A DNA stretch of 64,000 bases from Fimbriosthenelais zetlandica (Eukaryota): the NCBI GenBank assembly GCA_977030845.1, contig OZ365113.1:37014001-37078000 (forward strand), given 5' to 3'. Both the position numbers and the translations under genes were made by a program. The notes beneath the pieces were generated by a model that had not been told where the DNA came from, ran no database searches, and saw only the letters and a list, made by a program, of their open reading frames with translations. Positions 4,698 to 63,005 of the stretch are shown in pieces; the first letter of the stretch is position 1, and every line of letters starts with the position of its first letter.

Positions 4698-5580
4698 TAG
4701 CTATACCCACTACATACATACACCTATACCCATGTGTATAGGTGTATGTATCTAGTAGAGGCCGTCTGGTAGACAGGTGTGGCCTGGTACAAGTTGCCAG
4801 TCATCGTTAACTTTTCAACCAGCCATCAAATATTCTTTCCACAAAAAATTAACACATAACACTGGCCTTCACTGAGAGGAAATGTAGATGAATGAAAGGT
4901 CAGGATCCCAGCATTCTTAACATGAACGCGAGACACTCAGCCTCTCAAAGACCTAACCCAATAATGCTCATTTATCATACTTAATCCACTCCAAAAAATG
5001 AACTATTTTTAAGAATTTGTATCAAATCTTCCAGATTCAAATCTTCATGTGCATAGGCTTTCTACCATTGAATATCTTATTGCCATTGAACTAAGCCAAT
5101 AAATATAATTTATCATTTTTAATCCACTACCAAAAATAACTATTTTTGGATTATTATTCAAACTTAGATAGAGATATTATTCAAACTTCCACATCCAAAC
5201 CTTCATGTGTATAAGCTTTGTACCTATGAATACTCATTGCTATAGAATTAATACAGGCAGCCAGAATTTACCTCCAAACTTCATCGGACAGTATAGGTTA
5301 ATGTTGCAGTTCTGTACAGTCAATATGTATTCTTTCACCGTCGATTTCTCTCGGGTGTTTAGTGTATTGTTTTTTGTGAGTTCATGATGGGAGGTATATA
5401 AGCTACACCTACCACCTGGGTGTATGGGTAGAGCTTGGTGATATAGTATAATAGGGAGGGGAGTTAATAGAGCTATGTGATAGGTAGCAGGGCTAGATCT
5501 ACTGATACATCCTCACTGTCCAAGGTTCTTATAATGCCTGTAATGCCTGTACACCTCTACTGTACATCTGTATTGGAGAA

Positions 5581-5601
5581 GAGAAAGAGACGCAGAGAGA
5601 G

Positions 5602-5648
<47 letters not shown>
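5581..5648. repeat. (GAAA)n/(GA)n microsatellite
   Basis: Direct reading of the sequence. Confidence 0.95.
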
Positions 5649-5684
5649 TGATGAGAGGCAGAGACACGAGAGGGAGTCAGAGAG

Positions 5685-6060
5685 GGAAAGACAGAGGGGT
5701 AGCGATAATAGGGAAGATAGGTAGAGAGGGGGGAGCAGAGAGGGAAAGACAGAGGGGTAGCGATAATAGGGGAAAGACAGAGGGGTAGCGATAATAGGGG
5801 AAAGACAGAGGGGTAGCGATAATAGGGGAAAGACAGAGGGGTAGCGATAATAGGGGAAAGACAGAGGGGTAGCGATAATAGGGAAGATAGGTAGAGAGGG
5901 GGCAGAGAGGGAAAGGCAGAGGGGTAGCGATAATAGGGGAAATAGGCAGAGGGGTAGCGATAATAGGGGAAAGACAGAGTGGTAGCGATAATAGGGGAAA
6001 TACAGAGGGGTAGCGATAATAGGGGAAATACAGAGGGGTAGCGATAATAGGGGAAATAGG
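5685..6060. repeat. 28-bp minisatellite cgataataggggaaagacagaggggtag, about 11-12 units with interruptions
   Basis: Period 28 (e.g. 5761 to 5789). It accounts for the repetitive ORFs 5529-6212 and 5677-6237. Confidence 0.95.
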
Positions 6061-6789
6061 CACAGAGAGAAAGAGGTAGAAAATACAGACAGAGGGAGAG
6101 AAGATAACAAAGAGAGGCAGATCTGGCAGAATCTGATGGATAGAGATATTATAATAGAGAAATATATAGAGACATAATATCTGTGATAACATAGCAGGTA
6201 CCACCCACACACACAGCGGGATAGGGCAGGTTATCACCTGATACCACCACCATCACACTCACAATGATTAGATAACGTATAAACAGCCAATATCCCAGCT
6301 TCATGACACGCCCCCAACAACAGTGTTTTACCATGGCAATGAGCAGGTTTTACCATGGCAATGAGCAAGGTCTTTCATCTTTTCTTCTACTTTGCTTTAT
6401 TGCACTGACTTATTGGCAACATGTTTACTCCAGTTATTAACTTCTTTTTTTTCGCTTAGAAAATGGAATTGAGCAAGGCTTTCCAGAGGATTTCTGTGGC
6501 TTGATATAATCATTTCAGGGGGTCAGACTCAAAGAGCAAATGCCAAAAACCCTTCTACTAGTGTATCTACTGGTTTCAATATCTTCAAGAAAGAAAATAA
6601 AAACAGTTCAAAGATCTCAAAGGGAAAAATCAGTCAATACTGAAGTTTCCTCATTCGGTCATTCCACATGACCTACTTCTGAGAGGGGAAAGGGAAGACA
6701 GCTGCCCATCCCCTTCCCTGAACCCCACCCCCTCCCCTATCCTTCTCCTCCCCCTTCCTCCCACCCTCCCCACAACAAAGCCATATTTT

Positions 6790-18733: not shown

Positions 18734-21188
18734 TTATAATGAAATAAATTATTTTAAGATTCCCATCTGTTTTTCTTCTGTCTGTCCATCTCTATCTGCA
18801 GTCTTTGTCTCTCCCTTTCCCCACTAAGTGCTGTCTGAGATGTTCCTCTCACATTTACAACAGTGTCTGATTATTTACCTTCTCTACACTACAAAACATC
18901 ACATCAGTAATTTATTTTTAGTCAGTAATATAATCTTCATCATGCCTAGACATTTGTTAATGGTAATAGGGCATTCATCATTGGCATCATATCAATGTTT
19001 GGTGCTTAATTACATTGATTATCTTGACCCAATTAACCGCAGGGAGTAAAAGGACAAAAAACTCACACCATACTAATGAGTTTCATATTATAGGGAGCTC
19101 CATACAGGTTTGATTCTTCCCCCTTTCACACCATTTCCTCGTTAGTACAGCATCTATTTAAGAAACCGACAAAGAGCAGAGGGGGCCAGTCTGAAGTTAG
19201 GACAATGGGTGCGAGTTTATCACTAAATTTCTAAATTGTTTGAGCCAAAATTAACACAATTGTGAAAGAAATATAGCTTTAAAATGAGTCTATTGGGATT
19301 CAGACGTTTCCTTTCCGTATAATTGACCTGCGACTTTCAGTCTATAAATACTTTTAAAGGATGAAAAATGATCGCAAAATGGAGTCTGGCTTTGAAAACA
19401 TCAACTGTCTCCCGGTAGTCATAAATGTTTTTGGGGAGACAGACATAGCAACAAGTAATTAACTGCTGTCTGGATGGGACATAAATCAGTGGAGTTTGTA
19501 AGCTGATCAGAGAGACTAGTCCAGCCATCTGAGCTCCATTAGACGCCTCCTATACTCCACCATTACTCATCAATCACTGTCTGTTTGCCACCTTTACCAC
19601 TGCCCATACATCGCAGCTATATCTGGGTTATTACATAATAATGTTTACAGTGTATAACGAGGAGTGATCAGAGATAAAACCATCATCAGACGTAGAGAGA
19701 CGGGGCGGATAATGATCAAACAGACCGGTATAGCCAACACAGCAGTACATAAGATTTGCTCATTTCAGCTGGAGATCTGCCTGATACAATTCACTGATTG
19801 ACTAGTCGCATCCACTGATTGACTAGTCGCATCAATCGCCGACCAATTTCGCATCAGTTGCCGACTAATTATCTCAACAAAACGATTTATTCTCAAAGCA
19901 CTTTTACGGGAAGTAGTCACTTTAAGTGGCACCAGATCCTGAATCTTGGTAAAATGATACACCCTGATAAGCCTGCCATATTTGATGGGTTTTTTTTAAA
20001 ACTTTAAGGCAATATTTTACTGTCACGTAATTTTCAGGATGGAAATTGTCCACCAAAAGGACATACGGGGGGAGGTGAGGTAATAACATGGTCTCACTTT
20101 CTCTCGACTACAATGACAAGAACGGCCAGAGTTGGTTGGTAAATTAAAGACTGAAAGCCCTCTCGCCCGAGGCTAGCAAGCCTTTAATGCCTATACACTC
20201 ACACACATCAGAGAGTTGAAAGTTAAAGTGGTGGATCAGTAAACGAGCAGTAGGTGATGAGGCCACCCACCCGGTGATACTTATCACTGCTGATAGAAGC
20301 TTTATCTACACTAGTATCAAACCAGGCTTTGATGTCCCATCACAGCAGGTAAAGAATGATCGATCCCTTTACATCCTTTATACCATACTTTCTCTTACAA
20401 ACCTACACAACAAGTTCAAGCAACAGCTTTAGAAACAATGATAAAGTCCCGGGCAAGTCTAGTAGGAAAGGGTAAAGGTACAATGACCCTGGGTGAGGGC
20501 CATTGAAGGGACAATCACTTCCATGACTATTTTGCCATAATGGCGGCTCCTAAACTATGCATTCTGAGGTCGTTCAAGCCACAATTTGAAATAATAGATC
20601 GTGTGGTCATATCCTGGGTTATTTCCACATATTCATTGCAGGTTTGGTCAAGATGTTGGGGGTGGAAATGGGATGGCAAGGGGAGGGAAATGACCCCACC
20701 TCTGCCCCGAGACAATCGTACTAAAGTATAGCACTTGATGGCCTTTAATAATAGCACAAAACTTGGGAAAGAGTTGAGATTTGGACATAATATTTGGTGT
20801 ATATTGGCTAGGATAGACATTTTAAAACAAGTGGCATATGGGCGGTTGCACCCAGAAGATAGTACAGATCTAAAAATATCATAAAGATTCGCTATTTTAT
20901 AATAGAAATAGTTCCAGAAGTCTAAAGGGTTTCAGAGACTCTATAAAAGGTCAATAAATGTCCAAATGTGATTACATTTCACAGATCCCAGAAAATCCAC
21001 TTTATCCAATGCATAGGTTTACCATCAAAGACGAGATAAGTGGAGAAAAACAAACACTTCAGACAAGGTAAGAGGTTCAAGGGTGAGTATTTATAAACAC
21101 CCTGGAGTTAGTGACCGCAGGACGCTAGTGGTCAAATGACCACTCACCAAGAATCTCACATACCAAACCAAATACAAGAGCTTGGTGG

Positions 21189-21202
21189 GTTTCCATGGTA
21201 AC
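21189..21202. promoter_or_regulatory. RFX X-box, perfect consensus match
   Basis: GTTTCCATGGTAAC matches GTTNCCATGGNAAC. Sequence match only; function untested. Confidence 0.5.
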
Positions 21203-21607
21203 CGCTGGTTTTGGGTGTGGAAGGTTGACTTTGACACGCATGGAGCGCTAGATATGCTCCCTTAGAGGCACACTGAATGGATTAAGGCCACCTAATACTG
21301 ATTTATCCCATAATCTGGCGGCTAAATCCAATAGCCTATAGACTAAATCAGGAGATGTATATGTTTCAGATCTAGATTATCACATGTGGTATGGATATGT
21401 GACTCGGGCACAAGTAGTGATTGGAAACACTGAAGTACACTATATTATTATTATTCGGGGAATAGTTTGAAGTACACTTTATTATTCTGACAACCTTTCG
21501 AAGTAAACTTTATTTCTATTTATTCACCAAATTAAAGTAGGGACCTGGCCCGTTTTCATGACGTTAATATTAATAGAATTATTTCTCATAAAATGTTAAT
21601 AACTTAC

Positions 21608-22943
21608 CCTCGCTTTGTATAAACTTAATCTCTCCTTTGCAATCCTGACACCCTGTCACAAACATACGTTCCAGTGACGTATTAAACGACGTGGAGACGT
21701 CGTCTGACGTATCATTAAGGTGCTGACATCCTATACCAGCCGATGACATGCTGGTAGGCATGCCCTTTGGCTGGGGCATTGCCCTTTTGTCACCGGTTTT
21801 AGGGGGTGACTGGTGTCCTTTACAACATAAACCGTCACCCCTGTCAACTCGGTCCACGTCTGGCGCCTCCCTACTAGTTGTCACTGTAGAGATTCCCTCA
21901 ATGCCTTTTTTCAAGGCTTTACCTTTACTGGATTTACTTCCGATACCACCTTTATGCTGCAGAGAATGCACACTCCCTTTGAGGGTCTTTTCAGAGCTTT
22001 GACTTCCCAATTTACTCACTTTTGGGACCTTGAACTTGCTCATGCCATGCTTGCCCTTGACAGGAGCAATTTTGGTTTGATTTGTTGCTGTTTTTGTCTT
22101 ATTTTTGATATTGTTACACATATGACAACCACTACACACACTATGATGAGTGACGTCATGCTTCACACTCGTACAGGCGTCTAGATCTGTCTCCATGTAA
22201 ACACCTTTATTAACCTCCCGGCCATTTTGAGCACCAGTTGATCTCAGGTCACTACATGAGCAGTTCCCGCGAGCAGCTCCGCTCTGTGGGTCATTCAGTG
22301 AATCATGGCTCACCCCCCGGGCATTCTGGTTGAGTTTCTGACAGGATGCCCCACTGGTAGTCAATGTAGGAGGTGTGTTTTGCATTAAGACTGAAGATGG
22401 AGCATGTCCGCATCTTCCATAGCAAGAGCATAAACCAGAAGTTCCACAACTCAGGGGGTCCCGACTACTGCTCCTTTCAACATCATTATTTTTGTGACTC
22501 AGACCCGGGGCACCATCACAGACACCATTCCTCTGGTCTGCTATCCTGTCACACTGACAGCTGGAATTGCTGTCACTTTCAAAGACATTATCATTGGAAT
22601 CACTCTGAGTGGTGTCCTGATTATTTTGGTACTCCAAGAAGAAAGTTTGTTCCAATGTTTCAGAAGGAGTGGCAAGTCCCTCCTCAAATCCACTCTCAGC
22701 TATAGAGCTGGGGGAGGCCTCCTCCTGGTCCCTCAGATCCTGGTATGATACACTTCCCTCCAGGCTTTCCTCCAGGATGGTTGGCATCTTCCCTGATTCC
22801 CCTGGGATCAAAGCTTGAGGGGGGAGAGGGGGTGGTGTCTGGGGTAGATTGTGGATGACGCCCGTGGTACCGTTGGTTGTGATGGTGAGATTATGGTTAG
22901 GGTAGAATTCCCCACTCTCTATCTCATCATCAGACCAGTACAT
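21608..22943 (-). CDS. Candidate large alternative coding exon of the MAGI gene (445 codons + 1 nt), low-complexity product with no recognisable domain
   Basis: By far the longest ORF in the window (454 aa, 22943-21579), on the MAGI strand and GC-richer than its flanks. A consensus donor GAGG|gtaagt at 21608/21607 lies 29 nt before the ORF end, in phase 1. A plausible acceptor ttttaatag| lies at 22964/22963. Confidence 0.7.
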
Positions 22944-24226
22944 GATTCCTCTCTATAACTGACCTATTAAAACCTCATATAAATATTAGAATTTCCCACT
23001 TTTTAAACACCAATTAACTGGTGATTAACTTCAATTTACACTATCCTTCAGACATCGAGGAATGTGTGAATACATTTTGATCGTACATCCTCAATCATAA
23101 CGACTTCCCAAGCCAAAAGCAATTTGCCATTAGTAACTCTGAACAAGTATGGCATTTACTTCATTTTGACAACGTCAAAAAATAGCTTCATAATGAAACT
23201 GCCACAAGGATCAGGAAACCATCAGGAAACCATTCTCCTGTTTCATGTTAAAACATGACAAACTTCTGGTGGATGGGTATCCATAATTTGACTTGAAATC
23301 TCACCGCGAGTTGACAAACTTTTTGGTCACAATCCAGAACTCTCCTTTGACTTTGTGGAGATGTTATATATTCCAGTGAAGCTACAGGTACCTGAGGAGC
23401 ATTCATGAGAGCCTATATTCTCCCCACCTCTCCTCAGGCTATTATAATTTCCGCTGCACTGAATTTGAACTTCAAACAAAAAATATAAAAAGCCTCCAGC
23501 AGCAGAATACATAACATGTATGGAGATGGCTGGGGGAGGGGGTATACTATGTGAGGACCTTTTTGTTCCTGTGTCAACTTTCTCAGCGAGAAAAAAATAA
23601 TTTTGCTCAGATGAAAGTCGGTATAAAATGAACTGTGGATGAGAGCATCTGACACCTCAGACTCATCTACCCCCTTCTCACCTTTCTCTTTTTGTTAATG
23701 AAGAAAGAGTATTCCCGCCTGGTTTTGGATCCCCAGGACCAAGTTACTCGGTTCCTTTGCTTATATTGGAAGTTCCAACAATTTCAATACAGTACAATTG
23801 CGTTGCACAGAATGATTCAACAGATATATCCATACAGATTATTTGGTCACGAGCCCTGTATGTATTAAGTATAGGTATGACTATTCAAGTTACTATAGTC
23901 CAAAATGATGTCAGTGTACTCCACTTGTGCAGGTGTTTTCTTGTCAGTGAGTTTCTTTTTTCCTTCATTCACTTGTTGGTGAACTGCATGGGTGATCTGC
24001 ACTAAGTCCCACTCTCCACCAACAACAGGCCTACATAGAGGTATGATGTAGGCTATATACCTCACAAAAAACATAAATACTGTATCCACAGGAGAAAAGT
24101 AAACACAACCTGGCAGATCAGTCTATGGAGGTATCCCTAGTCTCCCAACCTGTTGAGTCCGACCATTCAACGCATGATTCTACATTGAGTATGCTATACG
24201 AGTATCCAAGGAGATCTGGGTGTAAA

Positions 24227-24240
24227 GTTACTATGGCAAC
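24227..24240. promoter_or_regulatory. RFX X-box, one mismatch
   Basis: GTTACTATGGCAAC. Confidence 0.4.
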
Positions 24241-27200
24241 CAAACGATGGCAACCAAAAGGAACAGATCGTTTTGGTATCTTTAAGGAGTGAGTGCATGA
24301 CTTGGTGACTGTGAGTAAAGTCAGTGAATGACTGGGCCTCCCACTGTACAAGCGTCTGGCCAATCCTACAACTGATGGCCTAGAGCAAGCAGGGGTAGAG
24401 TTGCCCCTGCCTCTTTCCCCTACTTTTTCACGCTCCAGAGAATCCAGCATGGAGCCTTCAGATCCGGGTGCATCTAGCTAGCTAATGTCAGGAGTAAAGT
24501 TCTGTTATATATCCCGGCTCTGGACTGAGAGGTTTCCACATGAGATGGCCCTATCCTAAGATTTTTATTCCTCAAGGTGATTTTCATATGCAGCAGTCCG
24601 TTTCAATTCACGACATTAGAGTGGAGACATTATGGGTAATGATTACTCCTGAGGTATAAAAAGTCCCGACAGAAATGAGCCAAGGTGGAGAAATGGTTGG
24701 CAAGACTAGGAGTGGAGTGGTCATTATTGTCAAATCTCAGCCTGTGTGACTCACGAATGGGGCACGAGAGGAGGTGACTCAAGGTATAGGGGCTATACCC
24801 AACGCCAACTTATTCTCAAGAGAACATACATATAAGTGTCAGTAGTCCCCCTTAAACACAGTGGTAGAGAGTATAGCCGTGTGTATACCCTCAGGGGGTG
24901 TGGAGTGGGGTGTGAGAGGAAGGGGTATAAGTTTCTACCCTATCAGATCTAGGGGGGACAGGGTGGTTGGCGAGTGGCAATGCATTAATCCTATCACAGC
25001 CACTAAAGTACCAGGGCGTCTAAAACATGTGTAGAAGGGAAAACATGAGATCTTTATGTTTTCATGATGTAACATCCATGTCATTTGGATCAGTGTCAAT
25101 GTATGTATGACCCACGGAACCCGAGTGAGGATAACGCATGGATAATGACGTTTTTGACCTCCCGGGGTCCTAGTCTTTCTGACATGCACTTTTTCTCATG
25201 CACCTATTCAGAGTGGCCTCAGTTTTTTTTTTAGTTTTTTTTTCATCTCTGGCCCTAATGTGAGCTGAATGGATTTGCACACGATATTAAAGATTAGTGT
25301 GCGTGGGAAGAATACTCAATTCCCAGGGAACATATGGGACTCATGACCTTACTATATATTATTGGGCCCACACGCTAAGGTACAATTAAAAGACTTTAGA
25401 GGCTAAAGGTGCGACTACCTCCAATACTTGGCACTGAGCTTAAAGTTAGGTGCCAAGAGAGTAAGTTAAAGACCACACCCAGTGAATGGTCAATTCACGA
25501 GGTGAAATGACCATAAAAACAACAATAATGTGAAACAATGATCCTCTTTACTTAACAACAATGAAGTTGTTACTACCAAAGAGGTACAACTCAAGGCCAA
25601 ATTTGCTGGAAGCTGGAATGCCCTAGGATCAGGGAAATTGCTCAGGTATTGGTTATTTCCTGTCGGGAAGGAGCATAACAGGTATTAATTGATTCCCAAT
25701 AGGAAAAGCCCGCAGTAGCAGGTGTTTTCACCCTGGAGTCGCCCGGTTGGTGCGGAAAAGTCGCCCGCTTGTAAAATGTCCTGTGTTTAGCACCTGTGGC
25801 TTCCAATAGCTGAGAGAGTGGACTAATAGGGCTAGACTGACTCCACGCACCACCCACGGTCCTCATTCATACCCCAGCCATCATTATTCCATTACATTAA
25901 TGCTTTTAGTCAACCCACCACAATAAAAGCCTCAATGGCTGCACCGGCTGGAAAAAACGAATCACTTTAAATGTAAAGCCACGATTTGAAGGTAATCTAT
26001 TCCAGTCAAGTCAGAGGTGCGCGACCCCCTGGCTCGTGTTTCTGTTCTGATTGGGATGATTTAACCACAGACCAATAGCGTGTTTCCTCACATGGGAACT
26101 TCTCCTTAAGCAATTGATGGGAATAAATACGTGCCATCAACGATTGTCAACATTAACTATTACCTATTATGGAGTCCAATACAAAAGCTCAAAAGGCCTT
26201 TTTACCAGGGAAAAAGCTTCCAAGAAATCGGTCCTGGACTTTTTGTATGAATATATCCCAAGTTGGGAAAATCAGGCAGAATAAGACTGAATCAGTACTT
26301 TGCACGTACACAAATGTATTCTGTTATATGTATATCTATAGGTATGAAAATGGTCAAATGACAGGTGCACGTGGCTAGCTTATTGAGTGGCAGTCGTCAG
26401 GGGTATTTTCCCCAGGCAGGGACAGGTGTAGGGGTAAGATAGTTAGTCATATCCTTTAATTACCCCTCTCAAATATCCTTGTTGGTTAAGGAATCTCTCT
26501 TCGCTATCAGTGGACAGTGGAAGATTAAAACATATGATTCCATGTCATAAAGGATTTTGTTTTGAGTTAAACTTCCCATGGTCATTCAACGCATCAATGG
26601 AGACCAATAGATCAAACAGTTCAATGAGCCCACATAATGTCTGTGTACCAGTGCCACCCATCTCCATATGGATACAGTATATATCTCAGTTAACAGAAGG
26701 TGTCTTAAATGTTGACAATCTTGTCAGTAGATTATTAGAGTTTGTCTGTGCGTGGGTTGCGTCCCTGTCACGGTCCACTGGCTCCACATCCTGGAGCAGG
26801 TGAAGCAGGTGGATTATTGGAGCCTACTCACCCTGCTGACACCCTGTATAAAGCCTGGGTAAACTCCTACCAGGCCTCCATCTAACACAACTCTCACTCC
26901 AATAATAGCCCGGATATGATTGAGGGATCACGATCAGTAACTCACATTTCTAATATAACATCCTGAAACTGTATCCACAGGTGGATTCCAGGGTATTAGG
27001 GTAAAGACACGGAGTCCATATTTCTAAGGGTAAAACCAGGGTAATCCTATTGGAACCAAGATGGAAATCCCACCAGATATTCAGGCCAAAATTAGGCTAA
27101 AGTATTGTTATCATCTGGTAATAAACGTTCCCTGATTTTCTGGTTAATATATTTGATAATCCCAATGAGTTAATAGTTGGTTAAATGCCCAATGTACAGG

Positions 27201-34046: not shown

Positions 34047-34126
34047 CTTCGTCGTCACATTCCTCCAAATTCTTTTGTAACTTTGGGAGGCGCGGGTCGA
34101 GCCAATGGGTCGTCTCGTTGTTGTGA
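34047..34126 (-). CDS. MAGI: MAGI-family internal exon: second half of WW1 and WW1-WW2 linker (phase 2-1, 80 bp)
   Basis: Acceptor tttttcag|T and donor G|gtaatc. Translates (D)HNNETTHWLDPRLPKLQKNLEECDDE, completing WW1 (W...YF.DH..TTHWLDP). Confidence 0.92.
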
Positions 34127-37769: not shown

Positions 37770-38085
37770 TCAATAAAGTAGACAGTGCCATCATCTGTGA
37801 ACGACATTTCCCAGTTATCCGGTAGGGGACCAAGACTAGAATTGCTTTGGGCTCTCTCCAGGGACCTCTTGCGCTGTGTGGGGGCAGTGGAGTCGTCTGC
37901 TGACATATTGGTGGGGTAGGTGGCCGATGTTTTGGCCGTCGTCTCAATGTTGGAGCGGTTCCTCCGTCGCTTGCCTTCTGATGAGGCATGTTGACCAGGG
38001 AGCAGCTGACCAGTTGAGTTTGTTCGTCGGAACGGGGATGGACCAGAAGGTTCCTTGGGTGGCTTGGGTGTTCCATAGTGGTTTC
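37770..38085 (-). CDS. MAGI: MAGI-family internal exon: end of GK domain, linker, first half of WW1 (phase 1-2, 316 bp)
   Basis: Acceptor tacctttcag|GA and donor GA|gtaagt. Translates (G)NHYGTPKPPKEPSGPS...EGKRRRNRSN...LGPLPDNWEMSFTDDGTVYFI(D). In frame with the 39731-39850 exon. Confidence 0.95.
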
Positions 38086-38324: not shown

Positions 38325-39319
38325 GCACTTGATAAGTGTCAGTGACATTGACAAATCACATTTAGAAGCAGTTGCCCACTGACAACCATGTTCTGTTATA
38401 ATGCATTGTTGGCCTTACTTTTGAAAGGCTGTCACAACACTTTGGTAGTCCACTGACAACCAAAATTTGACAACATGGTTGTCAGCACCTTTTTGGGTAG
38501 TCCAGGGCGCCAATTTAGTAAGCCCTGCGTAATCAATGTTAAACTGAATACGGAAATTTCAAAATAAATTTCTATACACATCGAAATATTTCCCAATATT
38601 CCTCATATAAACTAACCACATGTAAAAGATACAAATTTACAAGCAGTGCCTAAGTGATACATTTTTAGTGATGCTCAATATATATACAGTAACTTAATAT
38701 GATAATTACTATAAAATAAAAGACATCTATACCCATTAAACAAGCCAGTTGTATACAGTGTAAAGCCTGCATCCTTCCACATCCCAAAACGTCGAGGAAC
38801 ATACTGGTTCCACAGATGGAGGCCTTCACAGATTAACCGCTCAATCAGCTAATAGCATGACCCATTAAACTTTATTGTTCCAGTCCAAAAATAGTTATAT
38901 AAACCTTTTTTATGGGATTCATAGGTTAAACAGGATGAGGATTTATGAAGTGGTCATACTTTGTCTGGTATTTATAGAGGATATTAATGGTTCATTTAAT
39001 GCTATTATTCACTATATAAATCAGACGACCATAGTATATATACCGTGTATCATGCCAACTCATCATCTCATCTCTCATTGAATAAGTGTGTTCACTGTCT
39101 GATCATATTTATAACACAATATAGCACTATCAGTAGATCAAATATTACAGACGGTTTTTATCCCAGAATCAGAACAGTCAATTTACGATGCAGATCAAGA
39201 AAAGATTTTTCTCAGAGTTGCCATTAGTGATAGAAAGCCTCCTGTTGTTTGATTGTATATTTAGCAATGGAACACAATGATCTACTCTTTTCAAAAGGTA
39301 GCAATGGTTCTTTCACAAG

Positions 39320-39645
39320 CCTCTCACCACAGACAGTGGTAGACATGGCTGGCCTTTACATGCCTCTCACCACAGACAGTGGGAGACATGGCTGGCCTTT
39401 TACATGCCTCTCACCACAGACAGTGGGAGACATGGCTGGCCTTTTACATGCCTCTCACCACAGACAGTGGGAGACATGGCTGGCCTTTTACATGCCTCTC
39501 ACCACAGACAGTGGGAGACATGGCTGGCCTTTTACATGCCTCTCACCACAGACAGTGGGAGACATGGCTGGTCTTTTACATGCCTCTCACCATAGACAGT
39601 GGGAGACATGACTGGCCTTTACATGCCTCTCACCACAGACAGTGG
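39320..39645. repeat. 43-44-bp minisatellite, about 7.4 copies, 85 bp from the GK exon donor
   Basis: Unit cctctcaccacagacagtgggagacatggctggccttttacatg. Confidence 0.95.
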
Positions 39646-39689
39646 TGGACCAACTGATTTACTGATGAAATCATTTGATGTTTCAACTA

Positions 39690-39875
<186 letters not shown>

Positions 39876-60666: not shown

Positions 60667-61262
60667 TAAGCCTCAAGCCTTAAGAAGTGTGTAGTTAATA
60701 GGGCCGGAGGATTCTGGCAGATCCAAGGATTATTATCCATTTTAATCAAATCCAACAGCCCATACCGACCGTCGTCTGAATAACGACATCCCAATAATCT
60801 CCCGTCTATAAATAATCACCTGATAAGACAAAATACTTCACATATCAGTCAATGAATGTGGCCACACATTTTGAACAGACCGTCTTTCTCTTTAAAATAT
60901 TCCTCCATGAAAAAGTGAGTGGGATATGAAGACAGTGAGAGTTTCAAACAATCCCACTGATCACCTAAAGTAAGGCTTGTCTTAGTCAATGGGGAAACGG
61001 TGGATAAAAACAACACGCAACCTTGACATCTCATGTGGGCTGACCCCAGCAAGGCCAGTCAGTTTGCCAGTTTCACCGCCTAATATGAATTGATTCACTT
61101 TTTTCGAAGCGCCAATTCTTGGACGTGTAATAAATCAAGGTAAAAAAGAAACCCATGGAGGTTCCCAATCATGAAGATAAAGAATGGGAGCTGACCCCTT
61201 AATGGGACGCGTCACATTACTTGAAGTATCCATCATGGAGCAGACTGGGGAGTTATAGGGGA

Positions 61263-61630
61263 AGACAAGCCAGAGATGGTCCGTATAGACAGGCCAGAGA
61301 TGGTCCGTATAGACAAGCCAGAGATGGTCCGTATTTCACCGGGAAGACAAGCCAGAGATGGTCCGTATTTCACCGGGAAGACAAGCCAGAGATGGTCCGT
61401 ATTTCACCGGGAAGACAAGCCAGAGATGGTCCGTATTTCACCGGGAAGACAAGCCAGAGATGGTCCGTATTTCACCGGGAAGACAAGCCAGAGATGGTCC
61501 GTATAGACAAGCCAGAGATGGTCCGTATTTCACCGGGAAGACAAGCCAGAGATGGTCCGTATTTCACCGGGAAGACAAGCCAGAGATGGTCCGTATTTCT
61601 CCGGGAAGACAAGCCAGAGATGGTCCGTAT
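61263..61630. repeat. Two-state minisatellite: 12 copies of a 24-bp core, 8 of them followed by a 10-bp module
   Basis: Core agacaagccagagatggtccgtat, module ttcaccggga. Order S,S,L,L,L,L,L,S,L,L,L,S. Confidence 0.95.
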
Positions 61631-63005
61631 TCCTCCAGTCTTCCTCCACTAATGTCAAGAGACACTGAAGCTCTACAGTTGATATGTAGACGGTACAGTA
61701 TAGGCATAATGGATCCAAGCAGCCATATAGCATGACCTATATATTTCAGTTTGCATTTAGCAGTGCCAGACACTATATACCTGCCCACGCAATTGGTACC
61801 GATAGGCCTATATTTCCCCCCATTTGAAACAAGAGTAAAATATTGAAGAAATTTTGAACAGAACTTGGCGTGCCACCTGACATTGTGGCCACCACAGTTC
61901 TGCTATCCACAGTATATTGCCAAGTTTAACCACAGTACTCTTCTTTTTTTAATCTTTTACTTAATTTTATTGGTCGAAAGATTGTCTCAATGCCAACCCA
62001 CCAGATCGACCAATTCCTGTGGAAATCGGTAAACCAACTATTTATGTGAAGACACAAGTCAAATATATACTTCCTTTTAGTGGAAATATTGTCAAAAGCC
62101 ACCAAATCAAATCAGTGGACCGGGGAAGAACAATACAAAGTACCTGCACACAAGTGCAAGATTAATGCTATATCTACAGCTAAAGGCCAATGGGTAATCG
62201 ATAGTAATCCAGGTGTTTACCACTCAAATGTTTACGATATTAGCCCAGCCTCATCGCCCTTAATGATGTCTAAACACGTGTGGGAGGCTAATCAGGAGGC
62301 AGGTCGATATAGTAGAGGGGAAGGAGCGGGAGAGGTACACCCACATGTGAAACACGTCACAAGCGGGTGCCATCTACCAACATGAAGTACCACCAAATTA
62401 CCTCCTACTCCAAAACCTCCATATCCAGTTACTTCAGCAAAAAGCACAAGCACAAGCAACTTCTAAATGCAAACTTTGGTGCTGAAAAACTTATTGCAAA
62501 ACATAGGCTAATCTTTATAGAAGAGATTTTTGTTACGCGATGAATTAAATTTTATAATGATTGAGGAAAGTGATGAGAAATATTGATGGAAATGAATGGA
62601 ATGGCTTTAGTTTGGCCATCAATCCGAAGAGAGATATGTTCAAAGTTTCTTCCTGCGGCAATCCATCATTTTATTGTACATAGAGAGATATGGCAGGGGG
62701 ATGAGTAATGTCAATGTAAACCATGTATAGACCATCTACATCTTACCCTGATGTAACTCAAGCAGAGCAATTAATTAATCCCGGGAGTAATATTAGCCTC
62801 AGTGTTGCCGTGATCCGTACTAATTGGTCATGTGATGCCGTGATAAAACAATAGGCCTATATCATACAATATACATTCCACGTTAATGCGTACTTCATAG
62901 ATTTCATACGCCATGGTCGAGAGGAAACACGCTGTCGACACAAAATGTCTACTCTTCTTGAACAGCTGCAGCAACTGTTCCTTTACGTCATAGCTAGTCT
63001 TCAAC

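What the first reader, a model, noticed from the sequence alone, without database searches (positions are those of the whole stretch)
21608..22963. Unrecognised 445-codon exon inside the MAGI WW1-WW2 intron: candidate new isoform N-terminus
Seen: a 1.36 kb ORF on the MAGI strand in an intron otherwise lacking long ORFs. It ends at a consensus donor (GAGG|gtaagt) in phase 1, the same phase as the end of the WW1 exon at 34047, so it would splice in frame to the same downstream exon. An in-frame TAG lies three codons before the ATG. Known: MAGI proteins run PDZ0-GK-WW1-WW2-PDZ1-5, and vertebrate MAGI2/S-SCAM has N-terminally shortened isoforms; I know no insert of this kind at this position. Inference: an internal promoter yields a MAGI lacking PDZ0, GK and WW1, with a lineage-specific, largely disordered N-terminus fused to WW2 and the PDZ array.
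Basis: partly seen in the sequence, partly recalled or inferred. Interest (0 to 1): 0.7.

Follow-up and report, generated by a model that had tools for sequence, protein, structure and literature searches.

The report
Conserved alternative start exon in MAGI
A 445-codon open reading frame inside an intron of the scaffold gene MAGI is a real protein-coding start exon, conserved in related invertebrates, and most likely gives MAGI a second form with a new disordered head joined straight to its second WW domain.

Summary
The ORF has its ATG at 22943, a TAG three codons upstream, and a GAGG|gtaagt phase-1 donor after 21608. The WW1 exon also ends in phase 1, at 34047.

It is not chance and not a transposon:
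- It is single-copy in the 447-Mb genome.
- Homologues occur in at least three other invertebrate assemblies. Similarity begins at the ATG and stops at a G|GTRAGT donor in the same phase.
- Two near-identical contigs of one relative give dN/dS 0.19 (P about 1e-6).

In a relative with only about 30% identity, the exon lies in the same WW1-WW2 intron, on the same strand and at similar spacing. No other conserved coding piece lies before the phase-1 WW2 acceptor. A cuttlefish MAGI gene model (AIP3) starts with the exon's C-terminal motif (C-x-D-C...IQ[SC]E) and runs directly into WW2.

Best reading (about 0.75): an alternative first coding exon giving a MAGI form without PDZ0, GK and WW1.

The product is predicted disordered. 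The internal promoter is inferred only; candidates are a conserved upstream CCAAT/RFX X-box block and a recurrent X-box just behind the exon. No RNA run was listed, so the splice is unproven in this genome. The scan holds no other note on this exon.

The parts
21608..22943 (-). Alternative first coding exon: ATG at 22943, 445 codons, plus the first base of a split codon (G at 21608).
   Evidence: ORF. Single copy. Homologues P0001, P0002 and P0003. dN/dS 0.19 between L003 and L018. DNA similarity to L002 runs only from ATG-3 to donor+5.
21602..21607 (-). Splice donor gtaagt, phase 1.
   Evidence: The same position and phase hold in L002 (GAGG|gtaagt) and L003 (GATG|gtgagt). P0003's read-through residues G-E-Y are compatible with G|GTGAGT.
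22953..22955 (-). In-frame TAG three codons before the ATG. It closes the frame upstream.
   Evidence: L002 and L003 also have in-frame stops 5 and 8 codons before their ATG.
22973..22987 (-). TATA-like AATATTTATATGAGG, 30-44 nt upstream of the ATG. A possible proximal core promoter; speculative.
   Evidence: L002 has AATATTTAT at -35 and L003 has an AT-rich AAATTATAAT near -40. The intron is AT-rich, so chance cannot be excluded.
24200..24776 (-). Single-copy conserved non-coding blocks 1.26-1.83 kb upstream of the ATG. They include a CCAAT box (GATTGGCCAG, 24356-24365) and an RFX X-box (GTTGCCATAGTAAC, 24227-24240). Candidate distal promoter, 5'UTR exon or enhancer.
   Evidence: Collinear blastn hits to L002 67-610 at the same distance from the ATG. 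Motif coordinates. Single copy in the genome. No Rfam family match.
21189..21202 (.). Palindromic RFX X-box (GTTTCCATGGTAAC), 405 nt downstream of the donor.
   Evidence: L002 has an X-box 0.72 kb after its donor. L003 and L018 have one 0.28 kb after theirs, in otherwise unalignable intron.
34047..34126 (-). MAGI exon encoding the second half of WW1 (HNNETTHWLDPR...CDDE). It ends in phase 1.
   Evidence: Homologous exon in ctg38650.
37770..38085 (-). MAGI exon encoding the GK end, the unstructured linker and the first half of WW1 (...GPLPDNWEMSFTDDGTVYFI).
   Evidence: (weak MAGI_u1 and WW Pfam hits).

Best explanation
The ORF is an alternative first coding exon of the MAGI gene, lying in the 36.3-kb intron between the WW1 and WW2 exons.

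Proposed mechanism:
- Transcription starts inside that intron (inferred).
- Translation starts at the exon's own ATG at 22943.
- The phase-1 donor after 21608 splices over 23.9 kb to the phase-1 acceptor of the WW2 exon.

The product has an intrinsically disordered N-terminal region of about 445 aa. This region has an acidic first third carrying two conserved short motifs (KMPTILEE and SPSSIAESGFEEG..TP), a cysteine-rich middle, and a polybasic stretch. It ends in a conserved motif, C-x-D-C-x-G-[QE]-I-[RK]-F-I-Q-[SC]-[ED]. That motif joins directly to WW2 and PDZ1-5. PDZ0, the guanylate-kinase-like domain and WW1 are absent.

This isoform would therefore keep the PDZ scaffold but lose the WW1-WW2 tandem, and its new head would supply different targeting or partners.

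Shown: the exon is coding, selected and single-copy; its boundaries, phase and position in the MAGI intron are conserved; a mollusc gene model joins the end motif to WW2.

Inferred: the splice in this genome, the internal promoter, and any RFX control.
For: 1. Anatomy and frame compatibility are confirmed.
2. The exon is single-copy with no Pfam domain, so it is not a transposon.
3. P0001 (58% identity), P0002 (about 30%) and P0003 (a 134-aa short form) share the motifs. All stop being similar exactly at G|GTRAGT after FIQ[SC][ED]. DNA similarity to L002 is confined to ATG-3..donor+5.
4. Purifying selection: 23 synonymous against 14 non-synonymous differences between L003 and L018, dN/dS 0.19, binomial P 9e-7. 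The flanking intron is 92-95% identical.
5. Microsynteny in ctg38650, all on one strand: GK-WW1a 501089, WW1b 507008, exon 519791-521222, WW2 543861, PDZ1a 547346. The exon lies 12.7 kb after WW1b and 22.6 kb before WW2, against 11.1 and 23.9 kb here. The acceptor cag|AA CTA CCC is phase 1.
6. tblastx finds no other conserved coding piece between the donor and WW2.
7. P0003 lies on the same 193-kb contig as the best MAGI PDZ1-2 exon homologue, P0006.
8. The NCBI model AIP3 of Acanthosepion pharaonis (P0012) reads ...[24 protein letters not shown].... The exon's end motif therefore abuts WW2 exactly at the predicted junction.
9. No poly(A) hexamer follows the read-through stop in L002, L003 or L018.
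10. AlphaFold gives mean pLDDT 35, rising to 57-63 only in the last 20 residues next to the junction.
Against: - No RNA evidence. No sequencing run was listed for this DNA, so the junction, the transcription start and expression are untested here.
- The similarity to the cuttlefish model covers only 14-16 residues (BLASTP E 0.024; hhalign E 0.001).
- tblastx could miss a short or fast-evolving second exon of a nested gene.
- The window has three AATAAA hexamers 54-95 nt after the read-through stop.
- An AG compatible with inclusion as an internal exon exists just before the ATG in each species, though in a poor acceptor context.
Confidence: 0.75

Rival explanations
1. An independent gene nested in the MAGI intron on the same strand. 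It would be either a single-exon gene ending at the read-through stop (21579), or a gene with further small exons before WW2 that never joins MAGI exons.
For: No transcript data link it to MAGI. The window has AATAAA hexamers 54-95 nt after the read-through stop. Nested genes can keep their position for long periods. All database homologues were called as stand-alone ORFs.
Against: - Similarity ends exactly at a conserved GTRAGT donor, and the read-through tails (5 to 29 aa) are unrelated.
- L002, L003 and L018 have no poly(A) hexamer within 400 nt.
- No second conserved coding piece lies before WW2.
- The donor phase equals the WW2 acceptor phase in both genomes.
- The cuttlefish model fuses the motif to WW2.
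Confidence: 0.13
2. An internal cassette exon, or an alternative terminal exon, entered from the WW1b exon. It would insert about 450 aa between WW1 and WW2, or truncate MAGI after WW1.
For: An AG that would keep the frame from a phase-1 upstream exon exists 7 nt before the ATG (gttatagagag|GAATCATG). Comparable AGs exist in L002 and L003 (my reading of the sequence).
Against: - In-frame stops 3, 5 and 8 codons upstream leave only a 9-24 nt slot for an acceptor.
- The acceptor contexts are purine-rich and not conserved.
- Protein and DNA similarity begin at the Met itself (M-[YV]-W-x-D) in all species.
- The cuttlefish model has no WW1 before the motif.
Confidence: 0.07
3. A chance ORF, a decayed pseudogene or a transposon remnant without function.
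For: No Pfam domain, no confident fold, no named homologue.
Against: - Single copy.
- The frame stays open in four or more genomes at 30-58% identity, with invariant motifs.
- dN/dS is 0.19 with P about 1e-6.
Confidence: 0.02

Closest known systems
C. elegans MAGI-1S (short isoform of magi-1, independently transcribed from exon 7; PMC2645691)
   Same: An internal transcription start within a MAGI gene gives a protein without PDZ0 and the GK domain but with the common PDZ1-5 array.
   Different: MAGI-1S keeps both WW domains. The form proposed here starts after WW1, keeps only WW2, and adds a large conserved isoform-specific N-terminal region (134-477 aa in different species).
Mammalian MAGI-2/S-SCAM beta and gamma isoforms (Hirao et al. 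2000, as cited in PMC2645691 and PMC8428372)
   Same: N-terminally shortened MAGI forms lacking PDZ0 and part or all of GK.
   Different: [quoted passage not shown] They have no unique N-terminal exon, and both WW domains are retained.
NCBI gene model AIP3 [Acanthosepion pharaonis] (P0012)
   Same: Its N-terminus ends in [14 protein letters not shown] and continues directly with ELPFGWEK (WW2), PDZ1 and PDZ2. This is the same motif at the same junction as predicted here.
   Different: Only 58 residues precede WW2 in that model, and the acidic motifs of the annelid-like exons are not in it. It is an uncharacterised, fragmentary model whose evidence basis is unknown.
Alpha/beta N-terminal isoforms of DLG-family MAGUKs such as PSD-95 and SAP97
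   Same: Alternative promoters and first exons give one scaffold different N-terminal heads that decide targeting: palmitoylated cysteines versus an L27 domain.
   Different: A different MAGUK subfamily with no sequence similarity. Palmitoylation of the cysteines here (for example the CC in GLCCKGH) is only a conjecture.

Membership tests
MAGI gene locus (MAGUK with inverted domain order) | GK-like domain followed by WW1, WW2 and a PDZ array, encoded in that order on one strand. | tested here: met
   All on the minus strand: GK exon 39690-39875, GK/WW1a exon 37770-38085, WW1b exon 34047-34126. WW2 is at L008:7690-7747, and five GLGF-type PDZ exons lie further left. Homologues are named MAGI/AIP3/AIP1.
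MAGI gene locus (MAGUK with inverted domain order) | The candidate exon belongs to the MAGI transcription unit, shown by a splice junction to MAGI exons. | tested here: inconclusive
   Same strand, matching phase, position conserved in ctg38650, and the motif-WW2 junction in cuttlefish model P0012. No RNA was available for this genome.
N-terminally truncated MAGI isoforms from an internal start (MAGI-1S, S-SCAM beta/gamma) | An independent transcription or translation start inside the gene. | not testable with these tools
   Indirect evidence only: similarity starts at the ATG, stops close the frame upstream, and there is a conserved upstream non-coding block with CCAAT and an X-box.
N-terminally truncated MAGI isoforms from an internal start (MAGI-1S, S-SCAM beta/gamma) | Retains both WW domains plus PDZ1-5. 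| tested here: not met
   The exon lies downstream of both WW1 exons, so the product can contain only WW2.
RFX/X-box-regulated gene | A match to the X-box consensus GTHNYY AT RRNAAC (quoted in bioRxiv 10.1101/2020.08.21.260547) near the start. | tested here: met
   Sites at 24227-24240 and 21189-21202. They lie 1.3 kb upstream of the ATG and 0.4 kb after the donor, not within about 200 bp of the ATG as is typical in C. elegans.
RFX/X-box-regulated gene | The site is conserved in relatives beyond background. | tested here: met
   The upstream site is conserved in L002. A downstream site is present 0.28-0.72 kb after the donor in L002, L003 and L018, in unalignable intron. The genome-wide density is about one per 75-100 kb.
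RFX/X-box-regulated gene | RFX binding, or RFX-dependent expression. | not testable with these tools
   No expression or binding data were available.
Transposable-element ORF | Multiple dispersed copies and transposase, RT or integrase domains. | tested here: not met
   One match in 447 Mb. No Pfam hit at E<=1.

The most novel reading that the evidence does not exclude
This would be an ancient isoform, predating the annelid-mollusc split, expressed under RFX control in ciliated or sensory cells. In it, a conserved Cys-containing module replaces WW1 and the inter-WW linker. The high-affinity WW tandem would become a single WW2 with a new intramolecular partner. The cysteine-rich and polybasic head (possibly lipidated) would re-target the PDZ1-5 scaffold to a different membrane compartment such as the ciliary base.
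Probability: 0.15. Interest if true: 0.65.

Novelty: new variant of a known kind. Interest (0 to 1): 0.45.

Why it matters
MAGI proteins organise junctions and synapses. In MAGI2 and MAGI3 the two WW domains act as one high-affinity unit (PMC6744271). A conserved isoform that starts between the two WW domains would separate the PDZ scaffold from that tandem and from PDZ0/GK, and would add a selected but uncharacterised head. That gives a natural 'single-WW' MAGI to compare with the full-length form. It also suggests that lophotrochozoan MAGI loci carry an unannotated promoter, so gene models in these genomes likely need this exon added. The gain is modest: alternative first exons are common, and shortened MAGI forms are already known.

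Tried and rejected
- RNA evidence: two searches for sequencing runs listed none, so read laying could not be used.
- Pfam: no family for the exon.
- ESM Atlas: only low-score, unrelated hits.
- AlphaFold with the six-sequence alignment: mean pLDDT 35 and no fold, so no fold search was run.
- Rfam on 20000-26000: only a chance mir-532 hit at E 0.79.
- Transposon origin: rejected, single copy.
- The length-limited homology search added nothing beyond P0001 and P0002.
- The MAGI GK/WW1a exon search did not return proteins from the contigs of P0002 or P0003. Synteny was obtained instead by walking along ctg38650 with neighbouring called ORFs.
- The first 20 kb around P0002 had no MAGI exon. The exons appeared only after further walking.
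- For the 193-kb contig of P0003 and P0006, no DNA was served. Order and orientation there remain unknown.
- The cuttlefish contig also gave no DNA.
- Other long MAGI hits either show the canonical WW1-linker-WW2 or start after WW2.
- Local X-box density is not above the genome-wide density. Only the cross-species position counts as evidence.
- A literature search for how the cuttlefish genome was annotated did not settle the basis of model P0012.

Full report
**Observation.** The minus strand carries an ORF at 21579..22943. Its ATG is at 22943, and an in-frame TAG (22955-22953) lies three codons upstream. After 445 codons the sequence reads GAG G|gtaagt, so the exon's last base is 21608 and the donor is phase 1. 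The second WW1 exon (34126-34047) ends GAC GAA G|gtaatc, also phase 1. I fetched the DNA left of the window. The WW2 exon is at L008:7690-7747, about 2.25 kb left of the window, with acceptor ttttgcag|AG TTA CCG TTT GGC TGG GAG. The join therefore reads ...[26 protein letters not shown] in frame. The host intron is 36.3 kb, and the exon's own downstream intron would be 23.9 kb. PDZ1-5 exons follow further left.

**Not a repeat, not chance.** The protein has one match in the 447-Mb genome, namely itself, and no Pfam family at E<=1. A full HMMER scan of 1.84 billion cluster representatives found three relatives:
- P0001: 58% identity, on a 6.3-kb Logan contig (L002).
- P0002: about 30% identity overall, on an ENA contig of 1.41 Mb.
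- P0003: a 134-aa short form, on an ENA contig of 193 kb.

The alignment shows invariant islands:
- KMPTILEE
- E-A-x-PSSIAESGFEE..TP
- DNVFESD (absent from the short form)
- a CxxC
- a terminal block, F....C-x-D-C-x-G-[QE]-I-[RK]-F-I-Q-[SC]-[ED]

P0003 keeps only the N-terminal and C-terminal blocks, so the long middle is dispensable.

**Exon boundaries are conserved.**
- Similarity begins at the Met (M-[YV]-W-x-D).
- In-frame stops lie 3, 5 and 8 codons upstream in the window, L002 and L003.
- Similarity ends at the same place in all. The donors are GAGG|gtaagt (window, L002) and GATG|gtgagt (L003), and P0003's read-through G-E-Y is compatible with G|GTGAGT.
- The read-through tails are unrelated.
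- At DNA level, window-versus-L002 similarity covers only 22946-22564 and 21875-21602, that is ATG-3 to donor+5.
- Poly(A) hexamers follow the read-through stop only in the window, not in L002, L003 or L018.

**Selection.** P0002 and P0005 come from two contigs of one sample at 44x and 45x coverage, probably haplotypes. Their exons differ by 23 synonymous and 14 non-synonymous changes. That gives dS 0.070, dN 0.013 and dN/dS 0.19. The binomial P is 9e-7 against neutrality. The flanking intron is 92-95% identical. Window versus L002 gives dN 0.35 with saturated dS.

**Link to MAGI.** I walked along ctg38650 using neighbouring called ORFs. On one strand I found, in order:
- GK/WW1a at 501089-501427
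- WW1b at 507008-507091
- the exon at 519791-521222
- WW2 from 543861, with acceptor cag|AA CTA CCC, phase 1
- PDZ1a at 547346-547558

The exon thus sits in the same intron, 12.7 kb after WW1b and 22.6 kb before WW2. Here the distances are 11.1 and 23.9 kb. The predicted join there is ...IRFIQCD-E-LPYGWEK. tblastx of that interval against the window region finds the exon, WW2, two further small exons and PDZ1a, but nothing conserved between the donor and WW2. P0003 lies on the same 193-kb contig as P0006, the best homologue (71%) of the PDZ1-2 exon. Order and orientation there are unknown because no DNA was served.

**A public model with the junction.** Among hits to the PDZ1-2 exon, the NCBI model AIP3 of the cuttlefish Acanthosepion pharaonis (P0012, 446 aa, gene span 79 kb) begins with 58 residues. 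These end in ...[16 protein letters not shown] and continue directly with [21 protein letters not shown] (WW2), PDZ1 and PDZ2. The last 14-16 residues match the exon's terminal block (BLASTP E 0.024; hhalign versus A1 E 0.001). The similarity is weak as a bare alignment. However, it ends at exactly the predicted junction, and nine constrained positions at a fixed place are very unlikely by chance (my estimate). I could not establish whether that model rests on RNA. Other long hits show the canonical WW1-linker-WW2 or start after WW2. MAGI exon homologues are named from an annelid (Ridgeia, 67%) and the cuttlefish (56%). The window is therefore from a lophotrochozoan, probably an annelid, and the end motif predates the annelid-mollusc split.

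**Protein properties.** AlphaFold with alignment A1 gives mean pLDDT 35. Only the last 20 residues reach 57-63. By charge, residues 1-150 are acidic (net -23) and 301-350 are basic (+10). There are 19 Cys and 58 Ser. The Atlas search gave nothing useful. The region is best read as a disordered head carrying short linear motifs, with an end block that may fold against WW2. In MAGI2/3 the inter-WW linker and a helix after WW2 lock the two WW domains into a tandem, and in KIBRA such a tandem binds about 3900 times more tightly than the isolated WW domains (PMC6744271). This isoform would lack WW1 and that linker.

**Promoter (inferred).** Single-copy non-coding blocks at 24200-24776 are collinear with L002 at the same distance from the ATG. 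They contain GATTGGCCAG (CCAAT, 24356-24365) and the X-box GTTGCCATAGTAAC (24227-24240), which matches GTHNYY AT RRNAAC. A second palindromic X-box lies 405 nt after the donor (21189-21202). L002, L003 and L018 each have one 0.28-0.72 kb after their donor, in otherwise unalignable intron. Genome-wide the motif is very common: 5926 strand matches against 15 for the reversed control, about one per 75-100 kb. Local density is therefore unremarkable, and only the recurrent position is evidence. A TATA-like string lies 30-44 nt before the ATG. None of this shows a transcription start.

**Known comparisons.** C. elegans magi-1 has independently transcribed long and short forms, the short one having two WW plus five PDZ domains (PMC2645691). 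MAGI-2 has shortened forms from alternative initiation sites (PMC8428372). The present case differs in two ways: it starts between the WW domains, and it adds a conserved unique head.

**Verdict.** This is a real, selected alternative 5' coding exon of MAGI, with confidence about 0.75 for the splice to WW2. It is a new variant of a known kind. The missing proof is transcript data.

Noticed in passing
whole genome G000; in the window 21189-21202 and 24227-24240: The X-box pattern GTTKCCATRGYAAC has 5926 strand matches in the 447-Mb genome, against 15 for the same pattern read backwards. That is a roughly 400-fold excess. Earlier scan notes also report X-boxes at many loci.
   Followed up: partly
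L008:3272-3285 (about 1.0 kb downstream of the PDZ1a exon); ctg38650 record 548872-548885 (in L017): Both genomes carry an X-box about 1.0-1.3 kb after the PDZ1a exon, in the PDZ1a-PDZ1b intron. It could mark a second conserved RFX site, or a further internal start, in MAGI.
   Followed up: no
L010:1993-3339 (minus strand; about 47 kb left of the window, beyond the MAGI 3' end): A 449-aa open frame starts like a C2H2 zinc finger (KKFQCTVCGRQSS...DLRVHMQNVH). It then repeats the 15-aa unit MQNVHATGKSNNSSY about 25 times. This looks like a tandem expansion inside a zinc-finger exon.
   Followed up: no
L003 versus L018 (ENA sample ERZ25767047, contigs ctg38650_44x and ctg39115_45x): The same locus occurs on two long contigs with equal coverage and 92-95% identity. 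These are probably two haplotypes of a highly heterozygous animal assembled within a metagenome-style assembly.
   Followed up: partly
P0003 (134 aa; ENA contig of 193,191 bp): One species has a short version of the exon that keeps only the N-terminal acidic motif block and the C-terminal Cys/IRFIQSE block. The roughly 300-aa middle part of the window's exon therefore seems dispensable.
   Followed up: partly
window 5477-6237, 39249-39657, 61221-61735: Simple or tandem repeats create spurious long ORFs on both strands: PLSLPL-type, HASHHRQWETW-type and GRQARDGPY-type units.
   Followed up: no
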